Of a stretch of DNA of 64,000 nt, positions 12,540 through 62,456 are shown piece by piece. Position 1 is the stretch's first letter. Each line of letters begins with the position of its first letter. Under the pieces are notes generated by a model that worked only from the letters and a program-made list of their open reading frames with translations, ran no database searches and was not told the origin of the DNA. The translations under genes were made by a program, and so were the position numbers. The stretch is from Pecten maximus (Eukaryota), in NCBI RefSeq assembly GCF_902652985.1, contig NC_047015.1:56296001-56360000 (forward strand). The letters are read 5' to 3'.

Positions 12540-15500
12540 TTTCAGATCGATGTTAAATTAAAATTTGAAATAATTTTAATATTTAATTCTAGAATATTTT
12601 TATCATCAGATCAATAAGCTATAACAAATTTCAAATATAAATTTTTGAATGCATTCCTCAAATCATTATATTTATTGGATTCTTTGAGAACTTTTTGAGT
12701 TCAAATATTTTAATGTATTTTTTAAAAAGTTTTTCAATACAGTCTTCACATTAATTTTTGACTCGTAGATAAAACTTTTAAAACTTGATTTTTCTGATAT
12801 AAATATTTTCAGGTCATTGTTGAATTAAGGTCCTAAATGTTCTTCTGAATAAAGTTTTAAGTTAAATTTATTTAAATGTATTTTTTAATAAATTTTTGAA
12901 TTCAATTTTCAGATTAATTTTGATATGAAGTCTAAACATGTTTTTACTTATTTTTCAAATACTAATTCTTAGATCCATCTTTCAGGTCATTGTTGAATTA
13001 AGTCATAAAATACTTTTTTGATTCTTTGAAATACATTTTAGAATATTTGAAATATTTTTGAAAAATTCTTGACATCAGTATTTTTATGCATTTATTCTTG
13101 TAATAAATTTTTGAATTCATTTAAATAATCTCATATTGATTTTTCAAATAATATTTGAATTCAATCTTCATATGTTTTAATAAATTTTTGAATATAATTT
13201 TCAGATTAATTTTGCCATGAAGTTTAAATATTTTTTTACTTATTTTTCAAATACTAATTTTTAGATCCATCTTTCAGGTCATTGTTGAATTAAGTCATAA
13301 AATACCTTTTTGATTCTTTGAAATACATTTTTAAATATTTAAAATATTTAAAAAGAATTCTTTACGTCCGTATTTTAATGTATTTATTCTTGAAATAAAT
13401 TTTTGAGTTCATTTAAATAATTAAATATTTATTTTTTAAAGAATATTTGAATTCAATCTTCACATAAATGTTTGACTTGTAGATGAAAGTTTTTAAGCTA
13501 GATGTTTCATATATGAATTTTTGAATTCATTCTTGCCATCAGTATTTCAATACTTAGTCTTTAATAGATTTTTGAGTTCCTTCTTTACATCAATAATGTA
13601 TCTAACCTTTAATGAATTTTTGAATTTGATCTTCACATTAATTTTTGACTTTTAGATGAAACTTTTTAAACTAGATTTTTCTGATATAAGTTTTTAGATC
13701 CATTTTTCAGGTCATTGTTGAATTAAGTCTTAAATATTATTTAATTCATTTGAATAAATTTTTGAGTTAAATGGTTTTTAAATATATTTTTTTAATAAAT
13801 TTTTGAATTTAATTTTCAGATTAATTTTGCCATGGAATTTAAATATTTTTTTACTTATTTTTCAAATACTAATTTTTAGATCCATCTTTCAGGTCATTGT
13901 TGAATTAAGTCATAAAATACTTTTTTGATTCTTTGAAATAAATTTTTGAATACTTAAAATATTTAAAAAGAATTCTTTACATCAGTATTTTAATAATGTA
14001 TTTATTCTTGAAATAAATTTTTGAATCATTTAAATAACTATTTATTTTTTAAAGAATATTTGAATTCGATCTTCATGTTTTTTTAATAAATTTTTGAATT
14101 TAATTTTCAGATTAATTTTCACATAAAGTGTAAATATTTGTTTACTTATTTTTCAAAATACGAATTTTTAGATCCAATTTTCAGGTCATTGTTGAATTAA
14201 GTCTTCAAATACTTTTTTGATTCTTTGATATAAATTTTTGAATACTTGAAATATTTAAAAAGAATTCTTTGCATTAGTATTTTACAAATGTATTTATTCT
14301 TGAAATAAAATTTTGAATTCATTTAAATAATTTAATATCTATTTTTTAAAGAATATTTGAATTCAATCTTCATGTTTTTTAAATAAATTTTTTAATTTAA
14401 TTTTCAGATTAATTTTGACAAAGTGTAAATATTTTTTTACTTATTTTTCAAATACTAATTATCGGATCCATCTTTCAGGTCATTGTTGAATTAAGTCATA
14501 AAATACTTTTTTGATTCTTTGAAATAAATTTTTGAATACTTGAAATATTTTTGAAAAATTATTGACATCAGTATCTTAATCATGTATTTATTCTTTAAAC
14601 AAATTTTTGAATACTTAAAATATTTTTAAAAAATTCTTCACATCAGTATTTTAATTATGTATTTATTCTTGAAATAAATGTTTGAATTCATTTAAATAAT
14701 TCAATATTTATTTTTTAAAGAATATTTGAATTCAATCTTAATGTTTTTTTAATAAATTTTTGAATTTAATTTTCAGATTAATTTTGACAAAGTGTAAATA
14801 TTTACTTGCAACAATAAAAAAATAAAATATTAATTTTGAATACATTCTTGATGAATTTAATAGTCCTTAATGTTTTCAGTTTTAAAAGTAAATTTTTGAA
14901 TGCAGATATATTTTTTTCAGATTAATTTTAACTTTTTAATCAATTTTTTTTCAAATACAAATTGTATTATCTTTTTTTCAGGTCATTGTTGAATTTTGTA
15001 TTTAAATATTTATTAATTCTTTTAAAAAAATTCTCGAGTTGAAATATATTCCTCAATAAATTTTTTAATTCAATTTTCAGATTGATTTTAACTTGTAGTC
15101 TTAACATTGTTTTAAAGATTTTTATAAATACATATTTTTGGATACATTTTTCAGGTCATTGTTGGATTTAACAGTCTTTAAATTTGTTTTAATTCTTATA
15201 AATAGATTTTGAATGAATTCTTGAAATATTGTATAGTTTATTATTTTTTAATTCAATCATCAGATCAATGTTTACTTGCCGCTTTAATTTTTTTTTTTTT
15301 TTTTTAATTTTTTAAAAATAAATTTTTGAATTTAAGTATTTTGAAATGTATTCCTGAAAGCATTTTGGAACTATCCGATTTGTTGACTTGTATTTTTATA
15401 TTATTTTTCAAATATTAATTTTTTCCGTATATTTAAATTAATGTTTAATTTATTAAAACAAAAATGAATTCATTCAAATATTTCAATATTCATTGTTAAA

Positions 15501-15760
15501 TAATTTTTGAATTCGATCTTCGGATTCATTTTGACTTTTTCAGGTCATCGTTCAGTTAAGTCTTTAAATATTTTTAAATTCTTAATTTTGTTGAATTCTT
15601 TTAATTGTTTTTTTTCTGTTAAGATCAATTTTTGATTTTTGAAATTCATTCTTGAAATTGTTTTTGTTTCCTTTAGATATTATTTCAAAATTTATTCTTA
15701 ATATATTTCGGATCAATTTTAATTACTTTTTCAATAATTCTAATTTTTGTTTTTATAAAT
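12540..15760 (+). repeat. Very T-rich degenerate tandem repeat tract
   Basis: 'tttcaggtcattgttgaatt' recurs at ~12807, 12980, 13272, 13705, 13886, 14179, 14473, 14976 and 15150, with a frequent spacing of ~293 bp. Confidence 0.85.
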
Positions 15761-15767
15761 TGATCTT

Positions 15768-15987
15768 TTTGCCTCTCAACTGATGAAGCCCGGGCAAACT
15801 TGTAACTTATTATTAAAGGGCAGAAACTCAATTGCCATATCGATTTCATATCATTCTCTTTCTATAATTGACATTCACTAATGTTTTGGCTGTTATTATG
15901 ACAACAAAACTTTATTAATAGTAACAATCCAGAAAAAGAAACATTTTCCAAAATTTATGAAATTATTTTGGCAGTTGAGTCTTGAGG
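15768..15987 (+). ncRNA. Type I hammerhead ribozyme (variant core, long loop III), predicted cleavage 3' of C15981
   Basis: Stem I: CTCAA 15775-79 / TTGAG 15982-86. Core: CTGATGA 15780-86. Stem II: GCCC 15788-91 / GGGC 15818-21. GAAA 15823-26. Stem III: CTCAATTGCCA 15827-37 / TGGCAGTTGAG 15969-79 (one G-U), then T-C. Pseudoknot: TTTGCCT 15768-74 / GGGCAAA 15792-98. Confidence 0.75.
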
Positions 15988-16685
15988 TCATTACACACCT
16001 CTTCTAATATTATGGAGCAGTTATCTCCGTTGTCAGTCCATTAATATCAATTATAGTTAATTATAGTTAACGTCACAGCATGATAGGAACATAAAAAATA
16101 TTCATTGAATCTTACAGTGCATCTATTCTTCAAGAATAAAATAATTGGGCGATATAGCTTTTGTGGCGAAATGACACTTGGGGATATATGGTTCCAAGTG
16201 GCTAAATGGTTTTCGAATTTGGGCGGTAGGAATCAAATTCGTGGCAAAATGTTTTTTTTCTTTTCTTTTTGGGACGAGTCTGTAATCCGTTTATATAGTA
16301 AGGAATGAAAAAACAGACATACAGTGAAAGCGCTAGTGCAAAATATTACTTTTGTCAATCATCAGTTTTATATATAATTTACTTGAAAATTTTCATCATA
16401 TGTGTGTATATATAAAGAAAAATAAAACAAGCCAAGATTTACCTTCATTTGCGGACTTTATTTGACGTTGCCGGGATATATGACGTCAAAAATACTGAAA
16501 ACGCCATAAGTTAACAACAGCTGTGACATCATTAACAAATTGTGCATGTAGGTTAGGTTTAAACATGTTGATAAACATTTTTTCTTTCAGTTCTTGAGCG
16601 ACCAAATACATGAAACTAATTCCTTGAACACTGGTGCATATGTGTGTGTGTATGTATTAACAAAGGAAGCCATATACATATATAA

Positions 16686-17712
16686 TCAAATATAAATCTT
16701 TGAATGCATTCTTCAGATCATTGTTAAATTTAGTCTTTAAATATTTTTTTTATTATTTAAATAAATTTTTGAATTAAATATTTTGAAATACTATTCCTGA
16801 ATACATTTTGGAATTCATCCAACAGATTTGTTGACTTGTATTTTTGTATTTTTCAAATATTAATTTTTTGCAATATATTATTTACATCAATGTTGCATTT
16901 ATTAAAACAGAAATGAATTCATTCAAATATTTCAATATTCATTGTTAAATAATTTTTTGAATTCGATCTTCGGATTCATTTTGACTTGTAGCCTTAACCT
17001 TTTTGTATCTGTTTTTAATGTAAATTTTTTAATACATTTTTCAGGTCATTGTTGAATTCAGTCTTTAAATATTTTTAAATTCATAATTTTGTTGAATTCA
17101 TTCTTGAAATGCTAAGAAATTTATTCTTGAAAAATAAATTTTTGAATTTAATAACCAAATCAATTTTGATCTGTAGCTTTAACATTTTATGTAGCTTTTC
17201 AAGATTTTTTTTAATTAATGAAATCATTTTTAAATGCATTTAATATTTTTTTAATTCATTTTTCAGATCAATTTTTAATTGACAGTTTTTCTGTTTTGGT
17301 CAATTTTTGATTTTTGAAATTCATCCTTGAAATTGTTTCTGAATTTATTAATTCTTTTTAATTGATCCCTTTAGATATTATTTCAAAATATATTCTTAAT
17401 AGATTTCAGATCAATTTTAATTACTTTTTCAATAATTCTAATAATAATAGTAATAATACATTTTGAACTGATATATTTTTTTAAATTTTCTTTATCTTTT
17501 TTTTTAATTTAAATTTTTTTTTCTTTTTTTTTTTAAATTTATCGTTTTGCCTCTCAACTGATGAAGCCCGGGCAAACTTGTTTCTTATTATCAAAGGGCA
17601 GAAACTCAATTGTCATATCGATTTCATATCATTCACTTTCTATAATTGAACACTAGTACTGGTGCATATGTGTGTGTATATGTATTAACAAAAGAAGCCA
17701 TATATATATATA
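16686..17712 (+). repeat. Diverged direct repeat of ~15320-15870 and 16626-16685
   Basis: Shared blocks include 'gaattcgatcttcggattcattttgactt', the hammerhead 5' half and 'ctggtgcatatgtgtgtg...gaagccatata'. Its start also matches 12631-12667. Confidence 0.85.
17546..17615 (+). ncRNA. Second, 3'-truncated copy of the hammerhead (catalytic half only)
   Basis: Same TTTGCCTCTCAA-CTGATGA-AGCCCGGGCAAA...GGGCA-GAAACTCAATTG, but the downstream TGGCAGTTGAGTCTTGAG strand is absent. Confidence 0.6.
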
Positions 17713-18815
17713 ATTGTGTGTGTGAAGCTATTGTAGTAATCACAATCCAAGATGTTTTACCTTATATTGTGACAACTACATTAGTTTAGAAAGGAGATAT
17801 ATTCTTTGTCTGAAGTTTGATTCTCTGGATACGTACGATACTGGGTTCGGATAATCTCAAGCATTTCTTATTCATAAAAAATGGCCATTTAAAACCCGTG
17901 AAACCATTTATTTATTTATTTAACGCTCCTGACGATATTTGCTAAAATCAATTTTCCATGTTCATAATTATGGCTTACCTTCCGAGCCACTGAAAGCCGG
18001 TCAGAGAGAGAGAGATATGTAAAGTCTCGACAAAGTGAATGAACGAGTAACTACCGTGGTGTTAGGTAGAGTATCAGCTTACAAGGAAACGAAAGCACCT
18101 GTTCCGATGAAACAAAAAGTGTTGTACATGTAGGTTTTGTGAGATAATTTTTCATGATTATTTTCGTCTTTATTGTTGGAAGGTACATGCAGAGTTTTGC
18201 TTCTCAGAGTTGAAATTGCAGTACTGTCTTGTGAAAAATGGATGTGGATTAAATCTTTTTTAACTTTGATTTTCCATCCTACGTCATCCAAAAGACGCTT
18301 GCATAAATGTTAAATATAAATTTTGAAAATGGCAGGGGTCTGGGTACTGTCCAAGCACAAGGGTTCGTTACAAATGACATGATATGCGAGATGGGTCGCA
18401 CTCGCATATGTATGCTTATAACATATATATATTGATTCATATCGGAATGTAACTAACCTGATTTAACTTCCATGTTGGATGAAATAAATACAATTCGTAC
18501 GTGTTCTTTGCGCTACTCTTCCAGATGTAACAGTGCTGTAATGGCATTGACTTGAAAATGAAAGCAGTTCAATGCTTAAATGATCAAATAGCAGATAAAG
18601 GTGTGTGTTTTTTCATTATTTGTAATACATCTGTCTAACCAGATATAGATTCCATATTGTGTGTCACACACTCAGCAAACCTAAGGGCCCAGTAGTAATG
18701 GCTATGGTGATCATGAGGCTGAGGTAAAGAGAAAAAAACACATAAACAGTTAACTTACTTTCTACCAGATTTATGCTCTTTGTGAGGCATTTAACATCGT
18801 TTTGCTCCGATAATG

Positions 18816-61684: not shown

Positions 61685-62456
61685 CAGACGTTTCGCCCCA
61701 ATGTCACAATGTCCCATGCCACAATGTCCCAATTTTTTTTCCTAATGTCCCAAATTTCTGTCACAATGTCCCAAGGAGGGTGTCACAATGTCCCAATGTC
61801 CCAAATTATTTGGGACATTGTGCCTGTCATTACCACAATGTCCCAAAATACCTTGCCACAATGTCCCAAATGTTACCACAATGTCCCAAAAATATTTCTC
61901 ATGTGTTAAATAGATGGAAAGTTGTGAGAGTGAATATCGGAACGTATATATCATGTTTCTTTTTATATATTCTTAAGTTCAACGGGGCATATATATCGGA
62001 ACGTATATATCATGTTTCTTTTTATATTTTATTAAGTACATCAGGATTTATATATCGGAACGTATATATATCATGTTTCTTTTTTTATATATTCTTAAGA
62101 ACAGAACCATAAACAGATAACATCAAAACGAAATATGACATCTTAAATCCATCCGATAAAAAAAATTACATGCCTTAGAAAACCAGTTTTCAAAGTCATA
62201 TGTCCATGGTGTTACCAATATTATCGTAGTAATAGACATTGATAGATGTAGTTATGTGCAATATACCTGAGAAATATTTTTGGGACATTGTGGCAAGGTA
62301 TTTTGGGACATTGTGGTAATGAAAGGCACAATGTCCCAAATAATTTGGGGCATTGTGACACCCTCCTTGGGACATTGTGACAGATATTTGGGACATTAGG
62401 GAAAAAAATTGGGACATTGTGGCATGGGACATTGTGACATTGGGGCGAAACGTCTG
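61685..62456. mobile_element. Foldback-type element with ~200-bp TIRs built of ACAATGTCCC subrepeats
   Basis: CAGACGTTTCGCCCCAATGTC... is mirrored by ...GACATTGGGGCGAAACGTCTG. Three ~60-bp internal repeats 'atatcggaacgtatatatcatgtttc'. Confidence 0.88.

What the first reader, a model, noticed from the sequence alone, without database searches (positions are those of the whole stretch)
15768..15987. Hidden hammerhead ribozyme with a 131-nt loop III, double-A core variant and pseudoknot
Seen: every element of a type I hammerhead in the right order. Stem I is 5-6 bp, followed by CUGAUGA, a 4-bp GC stem II, GAAA, an 11-bp stem III closing 131 nt downstream exactly onto GUC, then the stem I partner. 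The 7 nt 5' of stem I (UUUGCCU) complement loop II (GGGCAAA). Established: stem I-loop II contacts, including pseudoknots, activate natural hammerheads. Unusual: extra As flank stem II (15787, 15822), and the long loop would defeat motif searches with loop limits. Activity is inferred only.
Basis: partly seen in the sequence, partly recalled or inferred. Interest (0 to 1): 0.9.

Follow-up and report, generated by a model that had tools for sequence, protein, structure and literature searches.

The report
Conserved long-loop hammerhead ribozyme variant
The reported motif is real: a hammerhead-type self-cleaving RNA, with two extra adenines and very large loops, is kept intact in about 65 copies and five diverged lineages of a scallop repeat, although standard ribozyme models miss it and cleavage itself remains untested.

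Summary
It is not a chance look-alike. The window lies in the Pecten maximus assembly (exact match of assembly figures). The motif occurs about 65 times there, in five lineages (A-E) whose flanks and loops have diverged or are unrelated. Loop II is 20-79 nt and loop III is 32-146 nt. The pseudoknot tail, stems I-III, CUGAUGA, GAAA, GUC and both extra adenines stay essentially invariant. Lineage consensuses are 89-99% identical at hammerhead positions against 45-78% elsewhere (p 1e-4 to 1e-8). There are three compensatory double changes, two in stem III and one in the pseudoknot. The only core position that varies among complete copies is N7, the one position hammerheads leave free. Thirty complete copies show no change in core, stem I 5' strand, stem II or the extra adenines. 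Eleven copies that lack the 3' half carry eight such changes.

Rfam models find nothing, even in the compact 124-nt copy. The extra adenines amount to an A.A mismatch at the base of stem II; natural U.U precedents exist. Cleavage after C15981 is inferred only, because the available RNA data (contigs) cannot show RNA ends.

Verdict: supported, as a new variant of a known kind. The scan had noted other (49-nt minimal) hammerheads in this genome, but not this one.

The parts
15768..15773 (+). 5' tail UUUGCC, the 5' strand of the pseudoknot with loop II
   Evidence: Complementary to 15793-15798. UGCC is invariant in all lineages, while sequence further upstream is unrelated between lineages. The second pair changes U-A to A-U in lineage D.
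15774..15779 (+). Stem I, 5' strand (UCUCAA)
   Evidence: Pairs with 15982-15987. Invariant in 30 complete copies and in lineages A-E.
15780..15786 (+). Core C3-A9 (CUGAUGA); N7 is U15784
   Evidence: The only variation among complete copies is at N7 (U to A in two copies). Truncated copies show A6 to G.
15787..15787 (+). Extra A between A9 and stem II. With A15822 it forms an A.A at the base of stem II.
   Evidence: Invariant in every complete copy and every lineage.
15788..15821 (+). Stem II (GCCC 15788-15791 with GGGC 15818-15821) closing loop II (15792-15817). The pseudoknot 3' strand GGCAAA is at 15793-15798.
   Evidence: The stem is invariant. Loop II length is 20-79 nt across lineages, while GGCA at its start is kept.
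15822..15826 (+). Extra A15822, then G12 A13 A14 and A15.1 (GAAA)
   Evidence: Invariant in complete copies. G12 is mutated in two truncated copies.
15827..15837 (+). Stem III, 5' strand
   Evidence: 12-bp helix with 15969-15980, predicted in every fold. Compensatory changes at 15.6-16.6 and 15.10-16.10.
15838..15968 (+). Loop III, a 131-nt variable insertion
   Evidence: 32-146 nt in other lineages, and unrelated sequence in lineages D and E. It has the highest substitution density within lineage A.
15969..15981 (+). Stem III 3' strand (15969-15979), U16.1 (15980) and C17 (15981). The predicted scissile bond lies between 15981 and 15982.
   Evidence: GUC triplet placed as in hammerheads. Conserved in all lineages. 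The cleavage position is inferred from the hammerhead rule and was not observed.
15982..15987 (+). Stem I, 3' strand (UUGAGG)
   Evidence: Invariant across lineages, and sequence diverges immediately after it.
17546..17649 (+). Second, truncated copy: tail, stem I 5' strand, core, stem II, GAAA and stem III 5' strand only, with no 3' arm or cleavage site
   Evidence: 93% identical to 15746-15871. Sequence read. No second match to the 3' arm in the window. It carries a C to T change in the stem III strand.
15536..17102 (+). The ~1.5-kb repeat unit that carries the ribozyme near its start. It is tandem (2-3 units) at a few other loci.
   Evidence: BLAST of the window against other loci: units match 15536-17102 head to tail in L028, L010 and L011.
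985..18552 (+). Host: a large non-coding composite repeat. It comprises a 447-bp satellite array, AT-rich 292-bp subrepeats, the ribozyme unit, a truncated unit and a tail. The window's copy breaks off at 18552.
   Evidence: The same order of parts occurs at 12 or more loci. No ORF of 150 aa or more lies in 1-27000.

Best explanation
This is a selectively maintained type I hammerhead-class self-cleaving ribozyme, a structural variant of the known class.

Shown:
- A three-way junction with hammerhead core sequence and topology.
- Conservation confined to the hammerhead parts across five lineages.
- Compensatory changes in stem III and in the pseudoknot.
- Faster decay of copies that cannot form the motif.

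Inferred:
- As the repeat's + strand is transcribed, stem II and the pseudoknot (5' tail UUUGCC with GGCAAA of loop II) form first.
- The 12-bp stem III then clamps the distant 3' segment across a dispensable 32-146-nt insertion, and stem I closes.
- The RNA cuts itself after C15981, leaving a 2',3'-cyclic phosphate on the upstream piece, which keeps almost the whole ribozyme, and a 5'-OH on U15982.
- The pseudoknot takes the place of the usual loop-loop contact that holds stems I and II parallel.
- The two extra adenines form an A.A pair stacked between A9.G12 and the first G-C of stem II.

Biological role (inferred, least certain):
- The ribozyme processes transcripts of a large non-coding composite repeat.
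- At most loci, which have one complete and one truncated motif, it makes a single cut that separates the satellite-rich upstream RNA from the downstream part.
- At the few loci with 2-3 tandem units it would release ~1.5-kb unit-length RNAs that could be circularised, as in retrozymes.
For: - The motif is complete and correctly ordered, and it is the only descriptor hit in the window.
- The genome holds about 65 copies: 53 by pattern with control 0, 64 by fuzzy 27-mer with control 0, and 65 by covariance model.
- Lineages A-E share only the hammerhead blocks. Loop II is 20-79 nt and loop III is 32-146 nt, and flanks are unrelated in D and E.
- Consensus comparisons: A vs C, 66/68 same at hammerhead columns against 110/149 elsewhere (p 1e-5). 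A vs D, 59/66 against 83/156 (p 1e-7).
- Compensatory double changes: 15.6-16.6 A-U to U-A (E), 15.10-16.10 C-G to G-C (D, E), and pseudoknot pair 2 U-A to A-U (D). There are also three wobble-compatible single changes.
- 98.6% of cells are paired, against 21-49% when partners are slid by 1-3 columns.
- Within lineage A there are 8 variant alleles in 68 constrained columns against 83 in 176 others (p 7e-6). The core, stem II and extra adenines have none, and N7 has one.
- Internal control: 30 complete copies have 0 changes in core, stem I 5' strand, stem II and extra adenines. Eleven 3'-truncated copies have 8, including A6 to G, G12 to C or A, and G10.1 to U. Background divergence differs only about 2.4-fold. 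Further truncated copies are also mutated.
- The hammerhead fold is energetically competitive once the pseudoknot (about -6 kcal/mol) is added. MFE folds recover stems II and III.
- Precedents: pseudoknots in all three hammerhead types and a natural U10.1-U11.1 mismatch (PMC3088659); a U.U at the base of helix II in axolotl retrozyme hammerheads (PMC7229834); large loop insertions in discontinuous hammerheads (PMC2950038).
- The genome carries canonical hammerheads elsewhere.
Against: - No cleavage data. The only runs served are assembled contigs, which cannot show RNA ends; some cross the site, and their origin as DNA or RNA is uncertain.
- No Rfam hammerhead model matches, even at E up to 10, either in the window or in the compact 124-nt copy.
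- The A.A at the base of stem II displaces or replaces the quasi-invariant G10.1-C11.1 next to A9 and G12. According to PMC3088659, U.U is the best-tolerated mismatch there, so A.A may reduce the rate.
- Formal covariation is thin. Stems I and II never vary, and the tool count on alignment A1 sees only one doubly changed pair.
- MFE prefers a shifted stem I register (CCUC with GAGG) or pairs the tail with GGGCAG.
- All lineages come from one genome, so the conserved module could owe part of its uniformity to recent spread or recombination.
Confidence: 0.7

Rival explanations
1. It is a hammerhead-derived relic. The module descends from a ribozyme, but the A.A at the base of stem II has made it catalytically weak or dead. 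It is conserved because it spread recently or because it serves as a structural or protein-binding RNA element of the repeat.
For: - The A.A replaces the near-universal G10.1-C11.1 stacking position.
- Mismatches there other than U.U were the less active ones (PMC3088659, section 8).
- Stems I and II show no variation at all, as expected for recent common descent.
- Rfam models fail.
Against: - Every catalytic nucleotide and the GUC site stay invariant, while truncated copies of the same age mutate at A6, G12 and G10.1.
- N7 alone varies.
- The pseudoknot, which matters for fast catalysis, is kept and covaries.
- A purely structural role would not need CUGAUGA, GAAA and GUC.
Confidence: 0.2
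2. It is a chance resemblance or a DNA-level signal. On this reading the 12-bp inverted repeat and conserved blocks are features of the repeat's DNA (for example recombination or replication signals), and the hammerhead-like letters are coincidence.
For: - Relaxed hammerhead descriptors hit random sequence about once per 4 Mb.
- Inverted repeats are common in mobile DNA.
- Transcription of the locus is not shown.
Against: - Random hits never had a stem III longer than 6 bp.
- The three conserved blocks are mutually complementary in exactly the hammerhead arrangement, and the junction strands spell the hammerhead core. By my arithmetic this is of the order of 1e-6 by chance, given a three-way junction.
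- U.G pairs alternate with U-A pairs, which is an RNA-level signature, not a DNA-level one.
- Block edges coincide with the motif edges in unrelated contexts (lineages D and E).
Confidence: 0.05

Closest known systems
Type I hammerhead ribozymes of metazoan repeats (Rfam RF00163 Hammerhead_1; Schistosoma, newt and cave-cricket satellite hammerheads; non-LTR retrozymes, PMC7229834)
   Same: - Type I topology, with stem I open and stems II and III capped.
- Core CUGANGA...GAA, the A15.1-U16.1 pair and a GUC cleavage triplet.
- Residence in low-GC non-coding repeats of an invertebrate.
- A mismatch at the base of helix II has a metazoan precedent (axolotl HHR_Amex2, U.U).
   Different: - A.A interposed between A9/G12 and the first G-C of stem II.
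- The stem I/II contact is made by a pseudoknot with the 5' tail instead of a loop-to-loop or loop-to-bulge contact.
- Stem III is 12 bp, capped by 32-146 nt, rather than 1-6 bp with a small loop.
- The host unit is ~1.5 kb, usually one complete copy per locus, rather than 150-450-bp tandem monomers.
- No Rfam model scores it.
Pseudoknot-stabilised hammerheads (Perreault et al. 2011, PMC3088659; crystal structure PMC11300833)
   Same: A pseudoknot of about 6 bp links the stem II side to sequence attached to stem I. In the type II example tested in PMC3088659, this contact was critical for fast cleavage.
   Different: - In the common type II form, loop I pairs with the 3' tail after stem II. 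Here the arrangement is the circular permutation: loop II pairs with the 5' tail before stem I.
- In the crystallised form the pseudoknot replaces helix II. Here a 4-bp helix II plus A.A is kept.
Discontinuous hammerheads of mammalian CLEC2 3'UTRs (Martick et al. 2008, as described in PMC2950038)
   Same: The two halves of the ribozyme are separated by a long insertion in a loop, which hides the motif from loop-limited searches.
   Different: - It sits in a repeat, not in an mRNA 3'UTR.
- The core is non-canonical at the stem II base.
Minimal 49-nt hammerheads of this same genome (RF00163 hits in tandem; Penelope-like type)
   Same: Same genome, same ribozyme class, and association with repeats.
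   Different: Unrelated sequence. They have a canonical core next to stem II, a short palindromic helix III (CAGCUG) and 49-nt tandem units. They are found by Rfam, whereas the present family is not.

Membership tests
Hammerhead ribozyme (class) | Three helices around one junction in the order I-II-III. For type I, stem I is open and stems II and III are capped. | tested here: met
   Reading of the sequence. 98.6% of cells paired in 38 copies. Same layout in lineages A-E.
Hammerhead ribozyme (class) | Core strand C3 U4 G5 A6 N7 G8 A9 | tested here: met
   CUGAUGA at 15780-15786. Invariant except N7 in 30 BLAST-retrieved complete copies and in all lineages.
Hammerhead ribozyme (class) | G12 A13 A14, the A15.1-U16.1 pair, and H17 (not G) 5' of the scissile bond | tested here: met
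   GAA-A at 15823-15826, U15980, C15981 (GUC). Invariant in complete copies.
Hammerhead ribozyme (class) | Stem II starts directly after A9 and before G12, normally with G10.1-C11.1 | tested here: not met
   A15787 and A15822 lie between, giving either A10.1.A11.1 or an inserted A.A, and this is conserved in all lineages. The pair is quasi-conserved rather than absolute: natural U10.1-U11.1 hammerheads exist (PMC3088659 section 8; PMC7229834).
Hammerhead ribozyme (class) | Tertiary contact between the stem I and stem II sides | tested here: inconclusive
   A 6-bp complementarity between the tail and loop II is kept in all lineages, with one compensatory change in D.
Hammerhead ribozyme (class) | Site-specific self-cleavage giving 2',3'-cyclic phosphate and 5'-OH | not testable with these tools
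   Only assembled contigs were available, with no read ends.
Rfam hammerhead families (RF00163, RF00008, RF02275-RF02277) | Score at or above the family's gathering threshold | tested here: not met
   No hit at gathering threshold in the window. No hammerhead hit at E up to 10 in 15500-16300 or in the compact copy L037:960-1130.
Metazoan non-LTR retrozymes | Short (150-450 bp) tandem monomers, each with a type I hammerhead, expressed as circular RNAs | tested here: not met
   Units are ~1.5 kb. Most loci have one complete and one truncated motif, and only a few have 2-3 units. Lineages B-E are solitary. Circular RNA could not be tested.
Penelope-like elements (hammerhead in pseudo-LTR) | Reverse transcriptase/GIY-YIG ORF flanked by pseudo-LTRs that carry minimal hammerheads | tested here: not met
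   No ORF of 150 aa or more in 1-27000 of the window. Only three short ORFs (120-275 aa, not searched for domains) lie in the 10 kb downstream at another locus. The genome's minimal hammerheads are unrelated in sequence.

The most novel reading that the evidence does not exclude
An active, previously unrecognised hammerhead subclass. Its core tolerates, or needs, an A.A pair between the A9.G12 pair and stem II. It is held together by a long stem III across freely expandable insertions and by a type I-specific tail/loop II pseudoknot. It acts as a single-cut processing signal at the boundary between satellite arrays and the rest of a composite non-coding repeat longer than 20 kb in scallops. 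If true, the accepted hammerhead consensus and the loop limits of standard searches would be hiding a further layer of genomic ribozymes.
Probability: 0.5. Interest if true: 0.7.

Novelty: new variant of a known kind. Interest (0 to 1): 0.6.

Why it matters
- Hammerheads are the best-studied small ribozymes, yet genomic censuses rely on descriptors and covariance models with a fixed core and short loops. This family passes every evolutionary test available here but is invisible to all five Rfam hammerhead models.
- If it cleaves, it widens the accepted core, because an A.A at the base of stem II is conserved rather than merely tolerated.
- It would give a natural type I example of a tail/loop II pseudoknot.
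- It shows that loops II and III can each absorb up to about 80-150 nt.
- The compact 124-nt copy and the natural set of dead, truncated copies make it directly testable.
- It links a ribozyme to a large satellite-bearing composite repeat in a bivalve, a setting different from the short tandem retrozymes described so far.

Tried and rejected
- Rfam at gathering threshold and at E up to 10 on the window region and on the compact copy: no hammerhead hit, only weak unrelated noise (miRNA and snoRNA models, E above 0.2).
- Sequencing runs and read laying: only Logan contigs, two of uncertain kind (X1, X2) and two metatranscriptomes with nothing on the motif. They give no information on starts or ends, so there is no evidence for or against cleavage or transcription.
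- Formal covariation on the MAFFT alignment: only one doubly changed pair. MAFFT misplaces lineage D's loop II and lineage E's middle block, so I parsed the elements by anchors instead.
- MFE folding alone does not return the hammerhead's stem I, because it cannot model the pseudoknot.
- Search for further lineages by covariance model R1: nothing beyond A-E.
- Exact-pattern scan of JGI metagenome contigs: no match.
- Literature search for hammerheads in scallops: none in the held library.
- Host element: Penelope-like and LTR-retrozyme readings were considered and rejected for lack of ORFs and of complete terminal repeats. I could not classify the host.
- The element is non-coding and not a virus. 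I built no repaired or full-length version of it. Majority consensuses of the ~240-nt motif region were used only inside scripts to count differences.

Full report
**1. The observation**

- Tail UUUGCC, 15768-15773.
- Stem I, 15774-15779 with 15982-15987 (CUCAA with UUGAG, plus a U.G).
- CUGAUGA, 15780-15786.
- A15787.
- Stem II, GCCC with GGGC (15788-15791 and 15818-15821), around a 26-nt loop.
- A15822.
- GAAA, 15823-15826.
- Stem III, 11 bp (15827-15837 with 15969-15979, one U.G), or 12 bp with A15826-U15980, across exactly 131 nt.
- C15981 as position 17, so the triplet is GUC.
- GGCAAA (15793-15798) is complementary to the tail.

A descriptor scan of my own returns this as the only hit on either strand of the window. 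The same relaxed descriptor hits a 20-Mb Markov shuffle five times, never with a stem III longer than 6 bp. A single sequence of this quality is therefore unusual but not decisive. The decisive evidence is comparative.

**2. Where the window is**

The genome handle has 918,306,378 bases in 3,983 contigs. Contig 1 is 60,076,705 bases and contig 10 is 44,824,366. These are exactly the figures published for the king scallop Pecten maximus assembly (PMC7191990).

**3. The motif is part of a repeat family**

- A 351-nt query around the motif finds 43 matches at 80-96% identity to the query (91-96% for full-length matches).
- An exact pattern for the 5' half finds 53, with a reversed-pattern control of 0.
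- A 27-mer with up to 3 mismatches finds 64, control 0.
- A covariance model built from the compact copies finds 65, all of them in the same set.

These copies fall into five lineages:
- A is the window's type: 30 complete copies and at least 14 copies that lack the 3' half.
- B has four intact copies and one decayed copy.
- C has four copies, and three further copies are intermediate between B and C.
- D has two complete copies and one truncated copy.
- E has one complete and one 5'-truncated copy.

**4. What is conserved and what is not**

Across lineages, the flanks and loops diverge or are unrelated (D and E share nothing else with A).
- Loop II is 20, 21, 26 or 79 nt. In lineage E it carries its own long hairpin.
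- Loop III is 32 to 146 nt.
- The tail UGCC, stem I, CUGAUGA, the first extra A, stem II, GGCA at the start of loop II, the second extra A, GAAA, stem III, GUC and the stem I 3' strand are kept.
- Conservation begins at the pseudoknot tail and stops right after UUGAGG.

Counting on lineage consensuses:

| Comparison | Hammerhead columns (same/total) | Other columns (same/total) | Fisher p |
|---|---|---|---|
| A vs C | 66/68 | 110/149 (plus 51 gap columns) | 1e-5 |
| A vs B | 67/68 | 47/67 | 2e-6 |
| A vs D | 59/66 | 83/156 | 1e-7 |

**5. Pairing evidence**

- In the 38-sequence alignment, 98.6% of cells form standard pairs. This falls to 21-49% when the partners are slid by 1-3 columns.
- The tool sees only one doubly changed pair, because stems I and II never vary and MAFFT misplaces parts of D and E.
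- Parsing each lineage by anchors gives three compensatory double changes:
  - stem III pair 15.6-16.6, A-U to U-A, in E;
  - stem III pair 15.10-16.10, C-G to G-C, in D and E;
  - pseudoknot pair 2, U-A to A-U, in D.
- There are also wobble-compatible single changes: 15.7-16.7 U.G or U-A, 15.3-16.3 U-A or U.G, and 15.12-16.12 A-U or G.U.
- Alternation between U.G and U-A points to constraint at the RNA level.

**6. Selection within the young lineage A**

- Among 27 distinct complete copies, 8 variant alleles fall in the 68 constrained columns and 83 in the other 176 (binomial p 7e-6). The core, both extra adenines and stem II have none. N7, the one core position that hammerheads leave free, has one. 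Among truncated copies, N7 is seen as U or C.
- The repeat supplies its own control. Each locus ends with a truncated unit that keeps the 5' half of the motif but has no 3' arm or cleavage site. In the window this is 17546-17649.
- With copies retrieved by BLAST, that is, without regard to the core, 30 complete copies show 7 changes in 1,470 constrained cells. All 7 are in the two outer pseudoknot U's or are a conservative A to G in stem III.
- Eleven truncated copies show 13 changes in 539 cells. These include A6 to G, G12 to C and to A, G10.1 to U twice, and stem I C to A or U.
- In the strict set (stem I 5' strand, core, extra adenines, stem II, GAAA) the counts are 0 of 780 cells against 8 of 286.
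- Unconstrained sites differ only 2.4-fold (1.9% against 4.5%). About nine changes would therefore be expected in the complete copies if they were as free as the truncated ones.
- Three more truncated copies found later are also hit in the core or stem II.

**7. Folding**

- MFE predictions always recover stem III. For the compact and E copies they also recover stem II.
- They prefer a shifted stem I register (CCUC with GAGG), or they pair the tail elsewhere.
- Forcing the hammerhead costs 2.5 kcal/mol in the compact copy and 6.6 in the window copy. The pseudoknot duplex, which the program cannot model, is worth about -6 kcal/mol.
- The hammerhead fold is therefore competitive, not dominant. 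This is usual for ribozymes that act co-transcriptionally.

**8. Comparison with what is known**

- No Rfam family matches at gathering score. No hammerhead model matches at E up to 10 around the motif or on the compact 124-nt copy.
- The genome does contain canonical type I hammerheads: 73 RF00163 hits, 21 above threshold, many as 49-nt tandem units. Their sequence is unrelated and has the short palindromic helix III of Penelope-like elements. Other first-stage notes of this scan describe those arrays.
- The literature offers a precedent for each unusual feature taken singly:
  - Pseudoknots between the stem I and stem II sides occur in all three hammerhead types and are needed for fast cleavage (PMC3088659).
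  - Large loop insertions define the discontinuous CLEC2 hammerheads (PMC2950038).
- I found no precedent for an A.A at this place, nor for the combination. No paper in the held library links hammerheads and scallops.
- The best description is a hammerhead-class variant that works like a type I hammerhead but fails one quasi-defining feature (G10.1-C11.1 next to A9 and G12) and all current models.

**9. The host**

The motif sits near the start of a ~1.5-kb unit (15536-17102). At most loci the unit is present once and is followed by the truncated unit and a tail. A few loci carry two or three tandem units.

- Upstream lie AT-rich 292-bp subrepeats. Further upstream is the 447-bp satellite array of 985-11750.
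- The same order of parts recurs at 12 or more loci on many chromosomes.
- Other copies continue for several kb past the point (18552) where the window's copy breaks off.
- There are no long ORFs in the window's copy. The 10 kb downstream at two other loci has only short frames or frames lying beyond the shared homology.
- Lineage E's ribozyme lies directly after a 30-nt minisatellite of 47 units.
- I could not classify the host. It does not meet the definitions of Penelope-like elements, LTR retrozymes or short non-LTR retrozymes.

**10. Mechanism, with its status**

Shown:
- A conserved three-way junction with hammerhead core.
- Freely variable loops.
- Compensatory changes.
- Relaxed constraint in incomplete copies.

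Inferred:
- Self-cleavage after C15981.
- The pseudoknot acts as the stem I/II clamp.
- Stem III acts as a long-range clamp.
- The A.A stacks under stem II.
- The cut separates satellite-rich upstream RNA from downstream RNA, or releases 1.5-kb units where arrays exist.

Not shown:
- Transcription.
- Cleavage.
- Circular RNA.

The runs on offer were assembled contigs without end information.

**11. Verdict**

I put 0.7 on a maintained, self-cleaving hammerhead variant, 0.2 on a hammerhead-derived but catalytically crippled element, and 0.05 on chance or a DNA-level signal. It is a new variant of a known kind, of moderate to high interest. It is cheap to test, using the compact natural copy and the natural dead copies as controls.

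Noticed in passing
window 985-11750 and 12 or more other loci (e.g. G000:C18:6712638-6722058, C11:1508303-1516220, C4:49799828-49805548): The 447-bp satellite array upstream of the ribozyme unit recurs upstream of the ribozyme units at other loci, in the same orientation. Satellite, AT-rich subrepeats, ribozyme unit and tail therefore form one composite repeat longer than 20 kb.
   Followed up: partly
L066:367-1772, with the ribozyme from about L066:1781 (G000:C12:36733585): The lineage E ribozyme lies directly after a 30-nt minisatellite of about 47 units. Its loop II is 79 nt and contains a long perfect hairpin. Its only relative (G000:C8:699683-700031) has lost the 5' half to a different 24-25-nt minisatellite.
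   Followed up: partly
G000:C15:18199582-18200164, C16:2958335-2958921, C18:6794722-6795012 and others: Canonical minimal type I hammerheads (RF00163) occur as 49-nt head-to-tail units with a palindromic helix III (CAGCUG). They are unrelated in sequence to the family studied here. Other first-stage notes describe them.
   Followed up: partly
window 18552/18553: The window's copy of the composite repeat breaks off at 18552. Seven other copies continue with shared sequence for several kb, so the window copy is truncated or rearranged there.
   Followed up: partly
window 15846-15945 (run X2): A contig of depth 69 in run X2 joins 15846 to 15945 and runs on into sequence that matches the 3' flank of locus L041. 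A short-loop relative of the ribozyme is therefore abundant in that sample. Whether the run is DNA or RNA is not on record.
   Followed up: no
window 61889-61934 (G000:C1:56357889-56357934, - strand): A dispersed ~115-bp repeat begins about 70 nt downstream of the lineage E ribozyme. It has many copies genome-wide, one of them partly present in this window.
   Followed up: no
window 15788-15795: GCCCGGGC (the stem II 5' strand plus the start of loop II) is an 8-nt palindrome conserved in all lineages. It could allow intermolecular pairing of two ribozyme RNAs. This was not examined further.
   Followed up: no
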